Below, piece after piece: positions 6,531 through 37,715 of a stretch of DNA of 39,233 nucleotides. The translations under genes were made by a program, and so were the position numbers. Numbering within the stretch: the stretch's first letter is position 1; every line of letters starts with the position of its first letter. The stretch covers positions 101,566,678 to 101,605,910 of the forward strand of contig NC_068987.1 of assembly GCF_001194135.2 (NCBI RefSeq), in the 5' to 3' direction. Source of the DNA: Octopus bimaculoides (lineage: Eukaryota). The notes beneath the pieces are model-generated. The model did not search any database, was not told the DNA's origin, and saw only the letters and a program-made list of their open reading frames with translations.

Positions 6531-8534
<2,004 letters not shown>

Positions 8535-9239
8535 TAGGTGCAGAAATTTCATCATATTTGTGTGTGTGTGTGAGAGAGAGAGAGAAATTTTGTTTTATTA
8601 CATTTTATGTTTCCGAGAGCATTAAAATGGCGAAGTGTTAGAAATGGGAGAGCGCCGAACTAAATGACTTTCTGTATTTTGTTACATCCAATTACGTCCA
8701 CAAAACTCAAAACTGGCCATCAGAATCGTCTTTCATTGATTTTCACACCTCTGAGATCTATAAAATAAACACCAATGAACTATAACATTATCGTATAAAT
8801 TTGTTGCTTTGTGTTTCCATTAGAAATCAATAACTTGTCTGTTTATCTAAGTGCTATGTATATGTGACTATATGTGACTGTGTGCGTTTGGATGTGTATG
8901 TGTTTGTGTGAATATGTGTATGTAAGTAGTATCTGTTGCGCGTGTGAGTGTGTATGTGCGTGTGGGAGTCGTAAAACAGTGATAATCTTTAGGAAGAACT
9001 ATAATTGTAGGACAGCTTCTCGATTCCTATGTGTGAGTTGAACTCGAGACCTGAAAGCTTAAGTAGTAGTGAAGCATTTTAGTTCAGTTTGGTTTCGTTG
9101 CTTCCATTATTCTGCAAATACAAATAACCACTTGGAGTGTTGATAAGTCTGTAAACTAACGTTTTCAATGCGTGTTTCTGACTTAGGTACAAGAACCGCA
9201 GTTTTTGAAAGGAAGATTTAGAAAACATCATCAATCCAG

Positions 9240-11184: not shown

Positions 11185-11335
11185 NNNNNNNNNNNNNNNN
11201 NNNNNNNNNNNNNNNNNNNNNNNNNNNNNNNNNNNNNNNNNNNNNNNNNNNNNNNNNNNNNNNNNNNNNNNNNNNNNNNNNNNNNNNNNNNNNNNNNNNN
11301 NNNNNNNNNNNNNNNNNNNNNNNNNNNNNNNNNNN

Positions 11336-19694: not shown

Positions 19695-19919
19695 TACGAG
19701 GGGGTGCTGAAAAGTTCCTGATTTTAGATAAAAGAAAATACAGGATGATCAGTTAATTATGACTTTGTTCAACATATTCTCCTCTTAGATTCACACACTT
19801 ATTGCAGTGGTCCTTCAGTTTTTCTAAGCCCCGTAAAAGAACTCTGGAAGCTGGGTCTCCCTCCAGCCAGGCCTTTCGCGATACTCTTAAAGCCAAGAAC
19901 TTTTCAGCACCCACTTGTA
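19695..19919 (-). mobile_element. Mariner (Tc1/mariner) derived MITE / internally deleted element
   Basis: TA-flanked TIRs: TACGAGGGGGTGCTGAAAAGTTCCTG at 19695 and AAGAACTTTTCAGCACCCACTTGTA ending at 19919. Minus-strand 19839-19753 translates LLRGLEKLKDHCNKCVNLRGEYVEQSHN*, resembling a mariner transposase C-terminus (GI..L..RW.KCV...GEYVE). Confidence 0.85.
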
Positions 19920-20155
19920 AGAAGAAAAAATTGAACGGTGGATTGGCAGAACTTTTAGAGAGTCGGACAAAAGCCTTGCGGTAACTATTCCGATTCTTGG
20001 CGTAAGAACAGCACGGCCTGCAACGATATATTTTCCAAGCAGCATGGTCGCAAGTTGGCCGCCTATCCCTTGTAAGATGTCCAATGCATGCATGACAACT
20101 AGTTTTCTACAGTATTTACATTTGACGGATATTTGTGCTCATCTTGTTTGTTGTT

Positions 20156-20201
20156 ATCACACCGTTTCAGCTGATATACCTTCCAGCCTTCATCAGGTGT
20201 C
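20156..20201 (-). ncRNA. Minimal type I hammerhead ribozyme motif (Penelope-like), probably inactive copy
   Basis: Minus strand reads GACAC CUGAUGA A GGCUG(gaaggtatat)CAGCU GAA ACGG U GUGAU. The core is intact, but ACGU is changed to ACGG in stem III. Confidence 0.7.
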
Positions 20202-20253
20202 TTGGTGAAATTTCGAATCTAGGTTCTCATTCCTAAGGTATATTTCGATGTTG

Positions 20254-20291
<38 letters not shown>

Positions 20292-20446
20292 TTCACTGCC
20301 TCGAATCGAAGTCGGAATCTTAGGTTTAAGAACGTGGGCTACTAACCCCAGGATTCCGACTTCGATTCGAGGCAGTGACCTTTATAATAATAATAACATC
20401 GAAAAAATACCTTAGGAATGAGAACACAGGTTCGAAATTTCCCCAA

Positions 20447-20492
20447 GACACCTGAAGAAGGCTGGAGGGTATATCAGCCGAAACGTGGTGTT
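20447..20492 (+). ncRNA. Minimal type I hammerhead ribozyme motif (Penelope-like), probably inactive copy
   Basis: GACAC CUGAAGA A GGCUG(gagggtatat)CAGCC GAA ACGU G GUGUU: stem I, core CUGANGA, 5-bp stem II, GAAA, palindromic ACGU stem III, stem I'. The cleavage triplet is GUG, which violates the NUH rule. Confidence 0.75.
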
Positions 20493-20665
20493 AACAACAA
20501 ACCAGATGAGGACAAATATCCGTCAACTGTAAATAATGTACATAATTCCTCATCTCTTAGATATAGAACTGAACTAGTTTTCTGTAAATAAAATCATACC
20601 CACGCTTGTGCATATATATACCGATGCATGGTCAAACTTCACCGACGGAAGCCTTCTGACGATTC

Positions 20666-20785
20666 CAAGTACTCATCTGGTATTCATTTCATCGATCTTG
20701 AAAAGTTGAAAGGTAAGGTCTACCTCAGCGGGATTTGAACTCAGAAAGTAAAGACAGACAAAATACGGTCAGCTCGTCGCCTTTA
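20666..20785 (-). mobile_element. SINE family A, partial copy with internal deletion
   Basis: GAAAGGTAAGGTCTACCTCAGCGGGATTTGAACTCAGAA...CAGCTCGTCGCCTT. Confidence 0.7.
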
Positions 20786-20860
20786 AGAATGTGAAACGTA
20801 TTAGTTCAGCAAAGTAGTCTAAGATAAGCCTGGGATAGTGGAATAGAGTAATACCAAATC

Positions 20861-21063
20861 ATCCTTTATATTATAAGCACAAGGCCTGACATTTTGTGCG
20901 GGGCGGGTGGCTGGTCGATTACATCGACCCAGTGCTCAATTAGTACTTATTTCCATCAACTCCGAATGAATAAAAACGAAGTCGACCTCGGCGGCATTTG
21001 AACGTAAATGCAAACGAAATGCCGGTAAGCATTTAGACCTTGCGTTGCATTTTGACCAGCCTT
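20861..21063 (-). mobile_element. SINE family A, diverged copy
   Basis: GCACAAGGCCTGACATTTT...GTCGATTACATCGACCCAGTG...GTCGACCTCGGCGGCATTTGAAC. Confidence 0.75.
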
Positions 21064-34540: not shown

Positions 34541-34617
34541 CGTACACATGCGAAGCTTTATGTAAAGCGGAGATGCGCACGCGCATATGTTGTTTAACCA
34601 CAAATCAGCTTCTCTAG

Positions 34618-35204
34618 NNNNNNNNNNNNNNNNNNNNNNNNNNNNNNNNNNNNNNNNNNNNNNNNNNNNNNNNNNNNNNNNNNNNNNNNNNNNNNNNNNN
34701 NNNNNNNNNNNNNNNNNNNNNNNNNNNNNNNNNNNNNNNNNNNNNNNNNNNNNNNNNNNNNNNNNNNNNNNNNNNNNNNNNNNNNNNNNNNNNNNNNNNN
34801 NNNNNNNNNNNNNNNNNNNNNNNNNNNNNNNNNNNNNNNNNNNNNNNNNNNNNNNNNNNNNNNNNNNNNNNNNNNNNNNNNNNNNNNNNNNNNNNNNNNN
34901 NNNNNNNNNNNNNNNNNNNNNNNNNNNNNNNNNNNNNNNNNNNNNNNNNNNNNNNNNNNNNNNNNNNNNNNNNNNNNNNNNNNNNNNNNNNNNNNNNNNN
35001 NNNNNNNNNNNNNNNNNNNNNNNNNNNNNNNNNNNNNNNNNNNNNNNNNNNNNNNNNNNNNNNNNNNNNNNNNNNNNNNNNNNNNNNNNNNNNNNNNNNN
35101 NNNNNNNNNNNNNNNNNNNNNNNNNNNNNNNNNNNNNNNNNNNNNNNNNNNNNNNNNNNNNNNNNNNNNNNNNNNNNNNNNNNNNNNNNNNNNNNNNNNN
35201 NNNN
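34618..35204. other. Assembly gap (N run); other gaps at 715-817, 5295-5304, 11185-11335, 36487-36788, 37358-37457
   Basis: N characters in the sequence. Confidence 0.99.
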
Positions 35205-36210: not shown

Positions 36211-36908
36211 CTTTATTCTCTTATTGGTCATTGGATCGTGGCCGTGATGGGATAAAGCCTTGAAGGGTTTAGTCCAAGAGATTGGCACCAGACATATTTT
36301 TTATCAAGTCTGATATTCATTCTGTCAGTTTTTTTATAGTAAAATCACTAAGATACGAAGAACGAAAACAAACCAACACTGGTAGTAAAGCGGTGAGAGA
36401 CCACAAAGTCACCCTTACACACACACACATATATACATACACACACACACACACACACATATATACATACACATAACTCACACACTNNNNNNNNNNNNNN
36501 NNNNNNNNNNNNNNNNNNNNNNNNNNNNNNNNNNNNNNNNNNNNNNNNNNNNNNNNNNNNNNNNNNNNNNNNNNNNNNNNNNNNNNNNNNNNNNNNNNNN
36601 NNNNNNNNNNNNNNNNNNNNNNNNNNNNNNNNNNNNNNNNNNNNNNNNNNNNNNNNNNNNNNNNNNNNNNNNNNNNNNNNNNNNNNNNNNNNNNNNNNNN
36701 NNNNNNNNNNNNNNNNNNNNNNNNNNNNNNNNNNNNNNNNNNNNNNNNNNNNNNNNNNNNNNNNNNNNNNNNNNNNNNNNNNNNNNNNATTCACAAAGCA
36801 TTAGTTCTGCCAGAGGTCATTGCAGGAGACACTTTCTCGAATTGTTGCGTCATGGGACTGAACCCGAAACTTCATGATCGCGAAATCAATTTCTTAACCT
36901 CACTGCAT
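36211..36908 (-). mobile_element. SINE family B copy spanning an N-gap in its internal microsatellite
   Basis: 3' half at 36211-36420, (CA)n plus gap, then the 5' half TCACAAAGCATTAG...GGGACTGAACCCGAAAC at 36789-36908. Confidence 0.6.
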
Positions 36909-37715
36909 CTATCATGATATTTTCATCTGTTAAATATAATAAAAGCAAAACATTATAACCCAAACAATTCAAATATTACTGAAACGTTTTTCGAGATTAA
37001 CTGGTTGTCTAAGAAAGTTTCCTCGCTGTTTTCAACCGATCTAATTGAAACGATGACTAGACACATAAACTATAAGCATCTAAATATATTCTGTTTGTGT
37101 ATGTGTATGAAACGTATGTCTATACATCGTCGGCATTTGTAATAATATTTTCATCTTTCAACAAATGAAACAATAGCTTTTCAAATGTTCACTAAATGAA
37201 ACAAGTATAATAAATACTTAATGCTATCATTTGTTCAATACATATTTCATTACTTTTTACACGGGTATTCTGCATTAGATCTTATATCGCTTTATCTTTC
37301 TACATCTGAAATGAGATGTACGTTTAATGTGTACGCCCGTGTGTGTGTGTGTGTGTGNNNNNNNNNNNNNNNNNNNNNNNNNNNNNNNNNNNNNNNNNNN
37401 NNNNNNNNNNNNNNNNNNNNNNNNNNNNNNNNNNNNNNNNNNNNNNNNNNNNNNNNNCACACACACACATACATACACACACACATTGCTTTATCATTGT
37501 ATCTATGATCTGTATATATTAATTTTGTGTGTGTGTGTGTGTGTGTTTGTGTGTGTGAGTGAATGTGTAGGTGTATTTATTTTCGGGGCAGGAAAATGTA
37601 GATTAAACAAATCGATATCACTGTATTATCGATCGGAGGTGGAAATGAGCTCTCATAACTACAGCAGCAGCACTATCACCACCACCGCCACCATCAACAG
37701 CGACAACAACAACAG

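What the first reader, a model, noticed from the sequence alone, without database searches (positions are those of the whole stretch)
20156..20492. Two minimal Penelope-type hammerhead ribozyme motifs, one per arm of an inverted dimer
Seen: the + strand at 20447-20492 reads GACAC-CUGAAGA-A-GGCUG/loop/CAGCC-GAA-ACGU-G-GUGUU, and the - strand at 20201-20156 reads GACAC-CUGAUGA-A-GGCUG/loop/CAGCU-GAA-ACGG-U-GUGAU. Established: this layout (short stem I, core with an extra A before stem II, loopless palindromic ACGU stem III) is the minimal type I hammerhead of Penelope-like elements, proposed to act as dimers. Inference: each copy has a different disabling change (GUG triplet versus ACGG), but combining them reconstructs ACGU-U-GUGUU with a cleavable GUU site. 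This suggests an active ancestral family whose local copies have decayed.
Basis: partly seen in the sequence, partly recalled or inferred. Interest (0 to 1): 0.9.

Follow-up and report, generated by a model that had tools for sequence, protein, structure and literature searches.

The report
Decayed hammerhead ribozymes in retroposon scar
An old, dead insertion of a Penelope-type retroposon in an octopus intron carries two mutated copies of that element's small hammerhead ribozyme on opposite strands; the motif is real and its ancestor looks intact, but this kind of relic is already well described in animal genomes.

Summary
Both motifs have the published layout of the minimal hammerhead of Penelope-like elements (PLEs). 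That layout is a short open helix I, CUGANGA, one unpaired base before helix II, GAA, and a loopless palindromic ACGU. A relaxed descriptor matched at most 1 of 1500 simulated windows.

Each copy is disabled. The + copy has G17. The - copy has G16.1, a G.U at 10.1-11.1 and a helix I mismatch.

Six further DNA copies from other loci plus the two here give the consensus GACAC-CUGAUGA-A-GGCUGG-AGGGUAUA-UCAGCC-GAA-ACGU-U/GUGUU. 126 translated copies agree: position 17 is U in 93%.

The "inverted dimer" is a single insertion spanning 20109-20571:
- It is flanked by a 12-bp target duplication.
- It consists of two 5'-truncated copies joined head to head.
- A 32-nt tail sits on one end only, which is the known PLE insertion signature.
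- The same architecture recurs at other loci.

The insertion lies in the first intron of an HS3ST-like gene of an Octopus bimaculoides-like genome. The two motifs are on opposite strands, so they cannot form a ribozyme dimer in one transcript. A transcript spanning both arms folds into a roughly 220-bp hairpin. Cleavage activity was not tested.

Verdict: real, correctly interpreted, but ordinary.

The parts
20097..20108 (.). Left copy of the 12-bp direct repeat AACTAGTTTTCT, the putative target-site duplication.
   Evidence: One search found the exact 12-mer only at 20097 and 20572. A non-simple direct repeat of 12 nt or more at comparable flanks occurs in 41 of 5000 random placements in this window.
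20109..20328 (-). Left arm: an inverted, 5'-truncated copy of the element. Its 3' end faces outward at 20109 and it lacks the 32-nt tail. It contains an internal (TTA)n run at 20257-20288.
   Evidence: inverted repeat with the right arm; microsatellite; sequence at the boundary.
20156..20201 (-). Decayed minimal type I hammerhead, copy L. The core CUGAUGA and GAA are intact. Its defects are G16.1 (triplet GGU), G10.1.U11.1 and an A.A mismatch in helix I. The ancestral cut site would lie between 20161 and 20160.
20329..20342 (.). A 14-nt unique spacer (AGAACGTGGGCTAC) at the head-to-head junction of the two arms.
   Evidence: One search reports 14 nt between the inner arms. One search gives the sequence.
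20343..20539 (+). Right arm: a direct, 5'-truncated copy of the element.
   Evidence: It is homologous to copies in L001, L004, L006, L007 and L008 at 75-80% identity.
20447..20492 (+). Decayed minimal type I hammerhead, copy R. Helix I is 5/5 paired, the core is CUGAAGA (N7=A) and GAA, helix II is 6 bp, and ACGU is palindromic. Its only defect is G17, which pairs with C3 in the predicted fold. The ancestral cut site would lie between 20487 and 20488.
20540..20571 (+). A 32-nt 3' extension ('tail') present only on the right arm. The same sequence is part of other family copies.
   Evidence: Searches show that left-arm end 20109 aligns with right-arm position 20539. The tail sequence recurs in L001 at 974-1010 and L004 at 772-845.
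20572..20583 (.). Right copy of the 12-bp direct repeat AACTAGTTTTCT.

Best explanation
The segment 20109-20571 is a single old retrotransposition scar made by Penelope-like-element (PLE) machinery. It lies in the first intron of an HS3ST-like gene of an Octopus bimaculoides-type genome.

The inserted RNA was the 3' module of a short element. I think it was most likely a non-autonomous, SINE- or retrozyme-like passenger of a PLE. The pseudo-LTR end of an autonomous PLE is the less likely alternative.

Mechanism (inferred from published PLE biochemistry): both cleaved target strands primed reverse transcription. This gave two 5'-truncated cDNA copies joined head to head with their 3' ends outward. 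One copy started at the distal RT start site and so carries the 32-nt tail. The other started at the proximal site and lacks it. A 12-bp target duplication flanks the whole insertion.

Each arm carries the element's minimal type I hammerhead, 52 nt (short end) or 84 nt (long end) upstream of the 3' terminus. The family consensus motif is intact and has a cleavable GUU site. In active elements it is thought to cut multimeric or read-through transcripts after two motifs pair through the palindromic ACGU to build helix III. That step is inferred, and published in-vitro activity is weak.

After insertion the two arms decayed independently, and they are now about 88% identical. The + copy acquired U17->G. 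The - copy acquired U16.1->G, C11.1->U and a helix I mismatch. Both are now dead.

The motifs are on opposite strands, so they could never have cooperated in one transcript. The host pre-mRNA spanning both arms would fold into a roughly 220-bp imperfect hairpin.
For: Motif identity:
- All unselected features of the published min-HHR are present.
- The chance expectation is at most 1 per 1500 windows.
- A homologous module of about 100 nt is found in other loci.
- In register, 79% of cells pair, against 19-48% when partners are slid. Three helix II pairs show changes on both sides, including U-A in octopus copies versus C-G in the related family.

Intact ancestor:
- The consensus of 8 DNA copies equals a cleavable hammerhead.
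- 117 of 126 translated copies encode Cys (UGY) at positions 17-1.2.
- The 15.2-16.1 codon is Arg 75, His 20 and Cys 19, against Gln 1 and Trp 0. This pattern fits CGU and not CGG.

PLE-type integration:
- The 12-bp duplication.
- A tail on one end only in the window, and also in L004 (10-bp duplication) and L009 (8-bp).
- Inverted pairs with different 5' truncation points in L001, L004, L003 and L009.
- 19 of 147 translated copies carry antisense plus sense motifs in one ORF, and in all 19 the antisense part is upstream.
- Literature: inverted 5'-truncated copies and a 30-40 bp tail at one end are PLE hallmarks (PMC8557442). A purified PLE protein cleaves and extends both strands and starts RT at two internal sites that define the tail (PMC11167929).

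Context and fold:
- Intronic position.
- Hairpin of -279 kcal/mol with z = -31.
Against: - No RT or GIY-YIG coding sequence is linked to this family in anything I could fetch, so the PLE connection rests on architecture and motif type.
- No 5'-complete octopus copy was recovered, so autonomous versus non-autonomous is unresolved.
- Rfam gives no hammerhead hit. An intact relative also gives none, so the models appear blind to this loopless form.
- Covariation support is weak. Shuffle controls are not exceeded. The W/R versus Q/R codon pairs in 101 translated copies show no association, which fits neutral CpG decay.
- The duplication has about a 1% chance expectation, not zero.
- Self-cleavage was not tested. 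For a real PLE, HHR cleavage was dispensable in vitro and no RNA ends mapped to the site.
Confidence: 0.8

Rival explanations
1. The conserved module is not a working ribozyme even in master copies. On this reading the hammerhead-like fold plus the downstream roughly 50-85 nt serve as the RNA handle recognised by the PLE reverse transcriptase or endonuclease, and cleavage is incidental or absent.
For: The homology between the octopus family and the unrelated-headed family covers the motif plus about 25 nt upstream and about 40 nt downstream, not the motif alone. Published min-HHRs cleave poorly. For the Anolis PLE, cleavage was not needed for insertion and no RNA ends mapped to the site. Naiad PLEs thrive without hammerheads.
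Against: All 11 core nucleotides, the NUH site, G10.1-C11.1 and the palindromic 15.2-16.2 are kept in the consensus of both families. That specificity is what catalysis requires. A 129-nt tandem array with intact motifs exists in the related family, which is the arrangement that permits dimer cleavage.
Confidence: 0.25
2. The arms are the truncated pseudo-LTR ends of an autonomous PLE rather than of a short non-autonomous element. On this reading the open frame that starts at ATG 20418 and runs through the motif is the start of the PLE protein.
For: In the Anolis Poseidon element the ORF starts inside the hammerhead, and RT starts 111-118 bp into the ORF. Here an ATG lies 29 nt upstream of the motif, and the frame stays open to the 3' end.
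Against: A profile of this peptide searched against 1.84 billion representative proteins returned short ORFs only. None had an RT-bearing protein with this N-terminus. The related family joins the same module to a non-coding, tRNA-like head. Every frame upstream of the ATG is closed in both arms.
Confidence: 0.3
3. A single copy inserted, and a later local rearrangement such as an inverted duplication or fork switch produced the second arm.
For: The arms differ by about 12%, which does not by itself show whether they arose together.
Against: The 12-bp direct repeat flanks the pair, not one arm. Head-to-head pairs recur at independent loci with different junctions. The orientation is 19 of 19 head to head. 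The one-sided tail fits two RT start sites.
Confidence: 0.07
4. The segment is a foldback or MITE-type DNA transposon, or a hairpin RNA gene (miRNA/siRNA precursor), and the hammerhead resemblance is coincidental.
For: It forms a near-perfect long hairpin. Rfam gives sub-threshold hits to miRNA precursor models: MIR2606 at 39 bits against a gathering score of 140, and mir-283 at 36 against 50.
Against: The Rfam hits are far below gathering scores and reflect hairpin shape only. Other loci have unequal arms with constant 3' ends and variable 5' ends, which indicates retroposition. The duplication lengths vary (12, 10 and 8 bp). The motif is far beyond chance.
Confidence: 0.03

Closest known systems
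Minimal type I hammerhead ribozymes (min-HHR) of metazoan Penelope-like elements (Cervera & de la Pena 2014, PMC4209133)
   Same: [quoted passage not shown] These motifs are scattered mostly as single or truncated copies. The paper also reports 'dual min-HHRs ~100-700 bp apart in opposite strands'.
   Different: Helix II here is 6 bp including a closing G.U, against 7-8 bp in the Schistosoma families. Both local copies violate the 16.1/17 requirement. No PLE ORF is linked. This octopus family was not found described in the papers I could search.
PLE insertion architecture (Craig et al. 2021, PMC8557442; Frangieh et al. 2024, PMC11167929)
   Same: Strong 5' truncation, an adjacent inverted 5'-truncated copy forming inverted repeats, a 30-40 bp tail on one end only, and a hammerhead near the 3' end. 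The known two-strand cleavage and extension, with two internal RT start sites, explains the shape.
   Different: Here the whole insertion is only 463 bp, with no full-length or tandem copy attached. The enzyme that made it is unknown.
Metazoan non-LTR retrozymes (Cervera & de la Pena 2020, PMC7229834; Li et al. 2026 preprint, 10.64898/2026.07.22.740005)
   Same: Non-coding elements that carry type I hammerheads and are thought to derive from PLE pseudo-LTRs and to depend on PLEs. The related family seen in L009 forms a head-to-tail array with intact motifs.
   Different: Retrozymes are defined by direct tandem repeats of about 170-400 nt, each with a ribozyme. The window copy is an inverted pair, and the tandem unit in L009 is only 129 nt.
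Schistosoma Sm-alpha SINE-like elements with hammerheads (Ferbeyre et al. 1998, as cited in PMC4209133)
   Same: A short interspersed non-coding retroposon that carries a hammerhead.
   Different: Sm-alpha carries a canonical hammerhead with loops and tertiary contacts, not the loopless minimal form. This comparison rests on the citation and my own knowledge and was not tested here.

Membership tests
Hammerhead ribozyme, PLE-type minimal type I | Core boxes C3-U4-G5-A6-N7-G8-A9 and G12-A13-A14. | tested here: met
   CUGAAGA/GAA in the + copy and CUGAUGA/GAA in the - copy.
Hammerhead ribozyme, PLE-type minimal type I | A15.1-U16.1 pair and a non-G nucleotide at the cleavage position 17 (NUH site). 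| tested here: not met
   The + copy has G17 and the - copy has G16.1. The family consensus does meet it: 16.1 is T in 7 of 8 copies, and 17 is T in 6 of 8 and C in 1. So the local copies are dead relics of a motif that qualifies.
Hammerhead ribozyme, PLE-type minimal type I | Open helix I of 4-5 bp (type I topology). | tested here: met
   GACAC/GUGUU is 5/5 paired in the + copy and GACAC/GUGAU is 4/5 paired in the - copy.
Hammerhead ribozyme, PLE-type minimal type I | One unpaired nucleotide between A9 and 10.1, a G10.1-C11.1 pair, and an extended helix II. | tested here: met
   The bulged A is present in both copies. Helix II is GGCUGG/UCAGCC, 6 bp. G10.1-C11.1 is present in the + copy and G.U in the - copy.
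Hammerhead ribozyme, PLE-type minimal type I | Palindromic 15.2-16.2 with no loop 3, so that helix III forms only between two molecules. | tested here: met
   C15.2-G16.2 is present in both copies. The full ACGU palindrome is intact only in the + copy and in the consensus.
Hammerhead ribozyme, PLE-type minimal type I | Site-specific self-cleavage. | not testable with these tools
Published relatives cleave weakly, and only as dimers or with an extended helix III.
Hammerhead ribozyme (Rfam models) | A match to an Rfam hammerhead covariance model. | tested here: inconclusive
   There is no hit at gathering score or at E<=10. An intact relative in L003 also gives none, so the models do not detect the loopless form.
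Penelope-like element insertion | Variable 5' truncation with constant 3' ends. | tested here: met
   Copies in the window, L001, L004, L006, L007 and L008 share the 3' region and start at different 5' points.
Penelope-like element insertion | An adjacent inverted 5'-truncated copy (head to head). | tested here: met
   Seen in the window and in L001, L004, L003 and L009. The orientation is 19 of 19 head to head in translated copies.
Penelope-like element insertion | A 30-40 bp tail extension present at one end only. | tested here: met
   The 32-nt tail at 20540-20571 is on the right arm only. The same asymmetry is seen in L004 and L009.
Penelope-like element insertion | A linked ORF with a PLE reverse transcriptase and a GIY-YIG endonuclease. 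| tested here: not met
   The 463-bp insertion has no room for one. No such ORF appears among the window ORFs or among proteins matching the module's translation. This is expected for a truncated or non-autonomous copy. It means membership as a PLE proper is not shown, only PLE-type integration.
Non-LTR retrozyme | At least two head-to-tail tandem units, each with a complete type I hammerhead. | tested here: not met
   The window copies are inverted, not tandem. A related family does form a 129-nt x 2.7 tandem with intact motifs in L009.
tRNA-derived SINE | A Pol III tRNA-like head with A and B boxes. | tested here: inconclusive
   The window arms are truncated before any head. The related family has a head with A- and B-box-like strings, but neither ARAGORN nor Rfam recognises a tRNA there.
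microRNA precursor | A score at or above an Rfam family's gathering threshold. | tested here: not met
   The best hits are 39.4 against 139.7 and 35.7 against 50 bits. They span the palindrome centre and reflect hairpin shape only.

The most novel reading that the evidence does not exclude
The hammerhead-plus-tail module of about 100 nt is a portable 3' cassette that lets unrelated non-coding heads hijack PLE reverse transcriptases. The cassette is shared between this octopus family and an abundant family in an unidentified animal assembly. In that assembly it follows a tRNA-like head and also forms 129-nt tandem units with intact ribozymes. If this is right, these would be PLE-dependent SINEs and unusually small retrozymes. 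As a side effect, intronic head-to-head scars like this one would supply long double-stranded RNA in cephalopod pre-mRNAs, which could be substrates for RNA editing or small-RNA pathways.
Probability: 0.35. Interest if true: 0.45.

Novelty: new member of a known kind. Interest (0 to 1): 0.22.

Why it matters
For this window it matters little. The feature is a dead transposon relic in an intron, and it belongs to a class described in 2014 and known to occur in thousands of copies in many animal genomes.

It has three modest uses.
- It is a clean worked example in which family consensus restores an intact ribozyme from two differently broken copies.
- It shows the full PLE integration signature (inverted pair, one-sided tail, target duplication) in under 500 bp. 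This supports the two-strand priming model derived from in-vitro work.
- It points to a conserved hammerhead/tail cassette shared with a tRNA-like-headed element and a 129-nt tandem array elsewhere. That bears on how retrozymes and SINE-like elements borrow PLE machinery.

Tried and rejected
- Rfam at gathering score on the whole window and at E<=10 on 19900-20800 gave no hammerhead hit. I rejected this as evidence against, because an intact relative also scores nothing.
- An exact-pattern scan of viral contigs found nothing.
- I tried to fetch DNA for the two O. bimaculoides proteins that contain translated copies. P0003 is not on record, and the P0004 gene is too long.
- I tried to fetch the orthologous or same locus through the host gene. 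The gene spans 310 kb so no DNA was returned, and the O. vulgaris protein is not on record.
- The covariation test from translated copies (Trp/Arg versus Gln/Arg codons across helix II pair 32-46) showed no association: RR 33, WR 30, WQ 20, RQ 18. This is consistent with neutral CpG decay of dead copies, so I do not claim covariation from it.
- Column-shuffle controls on the 15-copy alignment were not exceeded. Only the register control is informative.
- I tried to identify the organism behind ENA assembly ERZ21867824 through a neighbouring 632-aa ORF. Only unnamed LINE (RT plus AP endonuclease) proteins came back.
- ARAGORN found no tRNA on the tRNA-like head.
- Pfam on short ORFs flanking and inside the insertion gave nothing.
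- The top hit of the representative search, P0010 (2162 aa, 21 stretches), is an unrelated repetitive ORF and was discarded.

Full report
**1. The observation.**
Parsed as a type I hammerhead, both have:
- helix I GACAC
- the box CUGANGA
- one extra A
- helix II GGCUGG / UCAGC(C/U) with an 8-nt loop
- GAA
- then A-C-G-(U/G), one nucleotide, and the 3' strand of helix I.

The + copy is perfect except that position 17 is G. In its predicted fold this G pairs with C3 and lengthens helix I, which is the textbook reason G17 is not tolerated.

I tested chance with a descriptor that leaves 16.1 and 17 free. With a perfect helix I it found 0 hits in 1500 first-order Markov simulations of the window. 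With one helix I mismatch allowed it found 1 in 1500. The real window gives 1 and 2. The motif is not a chance match.

**2. What surrounds it.**
The two motifs sit in a long imperfect palindrome. The outer arms 20103-20245 and 20403-20545 are 88% complementary. The inner arms 20275-20328 and 20343-20396 are 89% complementary, with 14 nt between them. There is no other copy in the 39-kb window, by BLAST or by a covariance model built later from 15 copies.

The pair is bracketed by an exact 12-nt direct repeat, AACTAGTTTTCT, at 20097-20108 and 20572-20583. A flanking repeat of that length is seen in 41 of 5000 random placements in this repeat-rich window.

The left arm ends at 20109, which aligns with right-arm position 20539. 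The right arm continues for a further 32 nt (20540-20571) before the direct repeat.

The window is animal DNA with microsatellites and assembly gaps. The ORF at 6543-8537 is exon 1 of an HS3ST-like gene:
- It is 100% identical to part of O. bimaculoides XP_052825790.1.
- It ends at a GT donor after 8532.
- Exon 2 is not in the window, and the gene spans 310 kb.

The feature is therefore intronic, and the + strand is the gene's sense strand.

**3. Relatives.**
One frame of the arm is open, so I used its translation as a handle.
- A word-indexed search found two O. bimaculoides proteins that contain translated copies.
- A profile search of 1.84 billion representative proteins found 176 hits. These are short ORFs that are translations of hammerhead-bearing repeats.

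From these I fetched DNA for five further loci of the octopus-type family. They are L001/L002, L004/L005, L006, L007 and L008, all Logan contigs of runs SRR11869384/85/91/94 with no species given. They are 75-80% identical to the window arm. I also fetched two 20-kb stretches (L003, L009) of a related, very abundant family from ENA assembly ERZ21867824.

The two families share about 100 nt. This covers the motif, roughly 25 nt upstream and roughly 40 nt downstream.

**4. The family consensus.**
Eight octopus-type DNA copies give GACAC CTGATGA A GGCTGG AGGGTATA TCAGCC GAA ACGT T GTGTT.
- Position 16.1 is T in 7 of 8 copies. The exception is the window's - copy.
- Position 17 is T in 6 of 8. It is G in the window's + copy and C in L004.
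- All seven copies of the related family have ACGT-T.

At the protein level, 126 translated motifs agree.
- The codon spanning 17-1.2 is Cys (UGY) in 117.
- The codon spanning 15.2-16.1 is Arg 75, His 20 and Cys 19, against Gln 1 and Trp 0. That is the pattern expected from CpG decay of CGU and not of CGG.

If both arms were copied from one RNA in one event, each acquired its disabling change after insertion.

**5. Structural support and its limits.**
On the 15-copy alignment, 79% of cells form standard pairs in the hammerhead register, against 19-48% when partners are slid by 1-3 columns. Three helix II pairs change on both sides. The clearest is U-A in the octopus family versus C-G in the related family.

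The column-shuffle controls are not exceeded. In translated copies the two codons that carry that pair vary independently (RR 33, WR 30, WQ 20, RQ 18). The genomic copies therefore look like neutrally decaying relics, mostly through CpG transitions. I do not claim statistical covariation.

Rfam gives no hammerhead match for the window. It also gives none for an intact relative, so that negative result carries no weight.

**6. How the inverted pair arose.**
Every locus where the upstream side is visible shows the same thing:
- Two copies sit head to head with their 3' ends outward.
- Their 5' truncation points differ (L001; L004; L003; L009).
- Among 147 translated copies, 19 carry an antisense and a sense motif in one ORF. 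In all 19 the antisense part is upstream.
- In L004 the tail is on the left arm only, and the pair is flanked by a 10-nt repeat. In L009 the tail is on the right only, with an 8-nt repeat.

These are the published hallmarks of Penelope-like elements. They include heavy 5' truncation, an adjacent inverted 5'-truncated copy, a 30-40-bp tail often at one end only, and hammerheads near the 3' end (PMC8557442; PMC8969392).

The purified Anolis PLE protein cleaves and extends both target strands. It starts reverse transcription at two adjacent internal sites, and the interval between them is the tail (PMC11167929).

My inference is that both target strands primed cDNA synthesis on the element RNA, one from each start site, and the two cDNAs were joined in the middle. 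The founding paper on PLE hammerheads already noted dual min-HHRs 100-700 bp apart on opposite strands.

**7. What the motif does.**
In the published model the loopless palindromic ACGU lets two motifs in a multimeric transcript build helix III between them and cut after H17. In-vitro activity of such motifs is low and dimer-dependent.

That model cannot apply to this locus. Both motifs are mutated at the cleavage site. They also lie on opposite strands, so any one transcript holds one sense and one antisense copy. The 488-nt + strand RNA folds into a hairpin of about 220 bp (-279 kcal/mol, z = -31). This buries the motif.

The sub-threshold Rfam miRNA hits only reflect that hairpin.

Whether the master element's motif truly cleaves, or mainly serves as part of the RT recognition module, is open. 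For the Anolis PLE, cleavage was dispensable in vitro.

**8. Autonomous or not.**
I could not recover a 5'-complete octopus copy. Three observations favour a non-autonomous element:
- The related family joins the same cassette to a non-coding head with A- and B-box-like strings. ARAGORN and Rfam do not call this head a tRNA.
- No RT-bearing protein carries the module's translation.
- All frames upstream of the ATG at 20418 are closed.

One observation favours a PLE pseudo-LTR. The Anolis element's ORF also starts within its hammerhead.

I put about 0.55 on non-autonomous and 0.3 on autonomous.

**9. Novelty and score.**
The kind of feature is well known. I found no description of this particular octopus family in the searchable literature, so I file it as a new member of a known kind. 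Interest: 0.22.

Noticed in passing
L009:10030-10379: A head-to-tail array of a 129-nt unit, 2.7 copies at 98% identity. Each unit carries an apparently intact minimal hammerhead (CUGAAGA ... GAAACGUU|GUGG). The array sits directly next to an inverted full-length copy of the same element. It looks like an unusually small retrozyme-type array. The source organism (ENA ERZ21867824) is not identified.
   Followed up: partly
L003:9700-10010 (-) and L009:9700-10030 (-): The abundant related family has a 5' head of about 100 nt with A-box-like (TGGCGTAACGG) and B-box-like (GGTTCAATTCT) strings. A body follows, and then the same hammerhead/tail cassette. This suggests a SINE-like element with a PLE-type 3' end. 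ARAGORN and Rfam do not recognise a tRNA there.
   Followed up: partly
P0004 (XP_052825882.1, O. bimaculoides 'dystrobrevin beta isoform X1') and P0003 (A0A0L8FV75_OCTBM): Copies of this repeat are annotated as protein. The first roughly 33 residues of the dystrobrevin isoform model (…GEGWRVYQPKCCVNNKQDEDKYPSK) are a translation of the hammerhead module. This is either an exonised repeat or an annotation artefact. P0003 is a 51-aa 'uncharacterized protein' that is nothing but the repeat.
   Followed up: partly
window:6543-8532 (+): Exon 1 of an HS3ST-like (heparan sulfate 3-O-sulfotransferase) gene. It has a long low-complexity N-terminal region and ends at a GTAGGT donor. It matches O. bimaculoides LOC106873887, whose gene spans 310 kb. 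The closest other species hit is Argonauta hians at 52% identity.
   Followed up: yes
window:19695-19919 and 19753-20093 (-): A 32-nt inverted repeat pair (TACGAGGGGGTGCTGAAAAGTTCC...) spaced 161 nt apart lies next to short minus-strand ORFs. From memory these ORFs resemble the C-terminus of mariner-type transposases. The hammerhead-bearing insertion lies immediately to their right. Pfam gave no hit for the short ORFs, so this is unverified.
   Followed up: partly
window:20715-20760 and 20975-21005: Two nearby stretches share a ...CCTC(A/G)GCGG(G/C)ATTTGAAC... string, which resembles a Pol III B-box / SINE core. They may be fragments of another octopus SINE family just downstream of the insertion.
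   Followed up: no
window, e.g. about 715-820, 11185-11335, 34617-35200, 36490-36790, 37360-37460: Runs of N (assembly gaps) lie next to dinucleotide microsatellites, so the window comes from a scaffolded draft-type assembly. Repeat structures near these gaps may be incomplete.
   Followed up: no
L003:4466-6364 (-) and L009:2061-2579 (+): The contigs carrying the related family also hold a highly multiplied LINE with RT plus AP endonuclease. More than 1200 relatives score E<=1e-20, and some clusters have thousands of members. No PLE-type RT was seen next to the hammerhead elements in the 40 kb fetched.
   Followed up: partly
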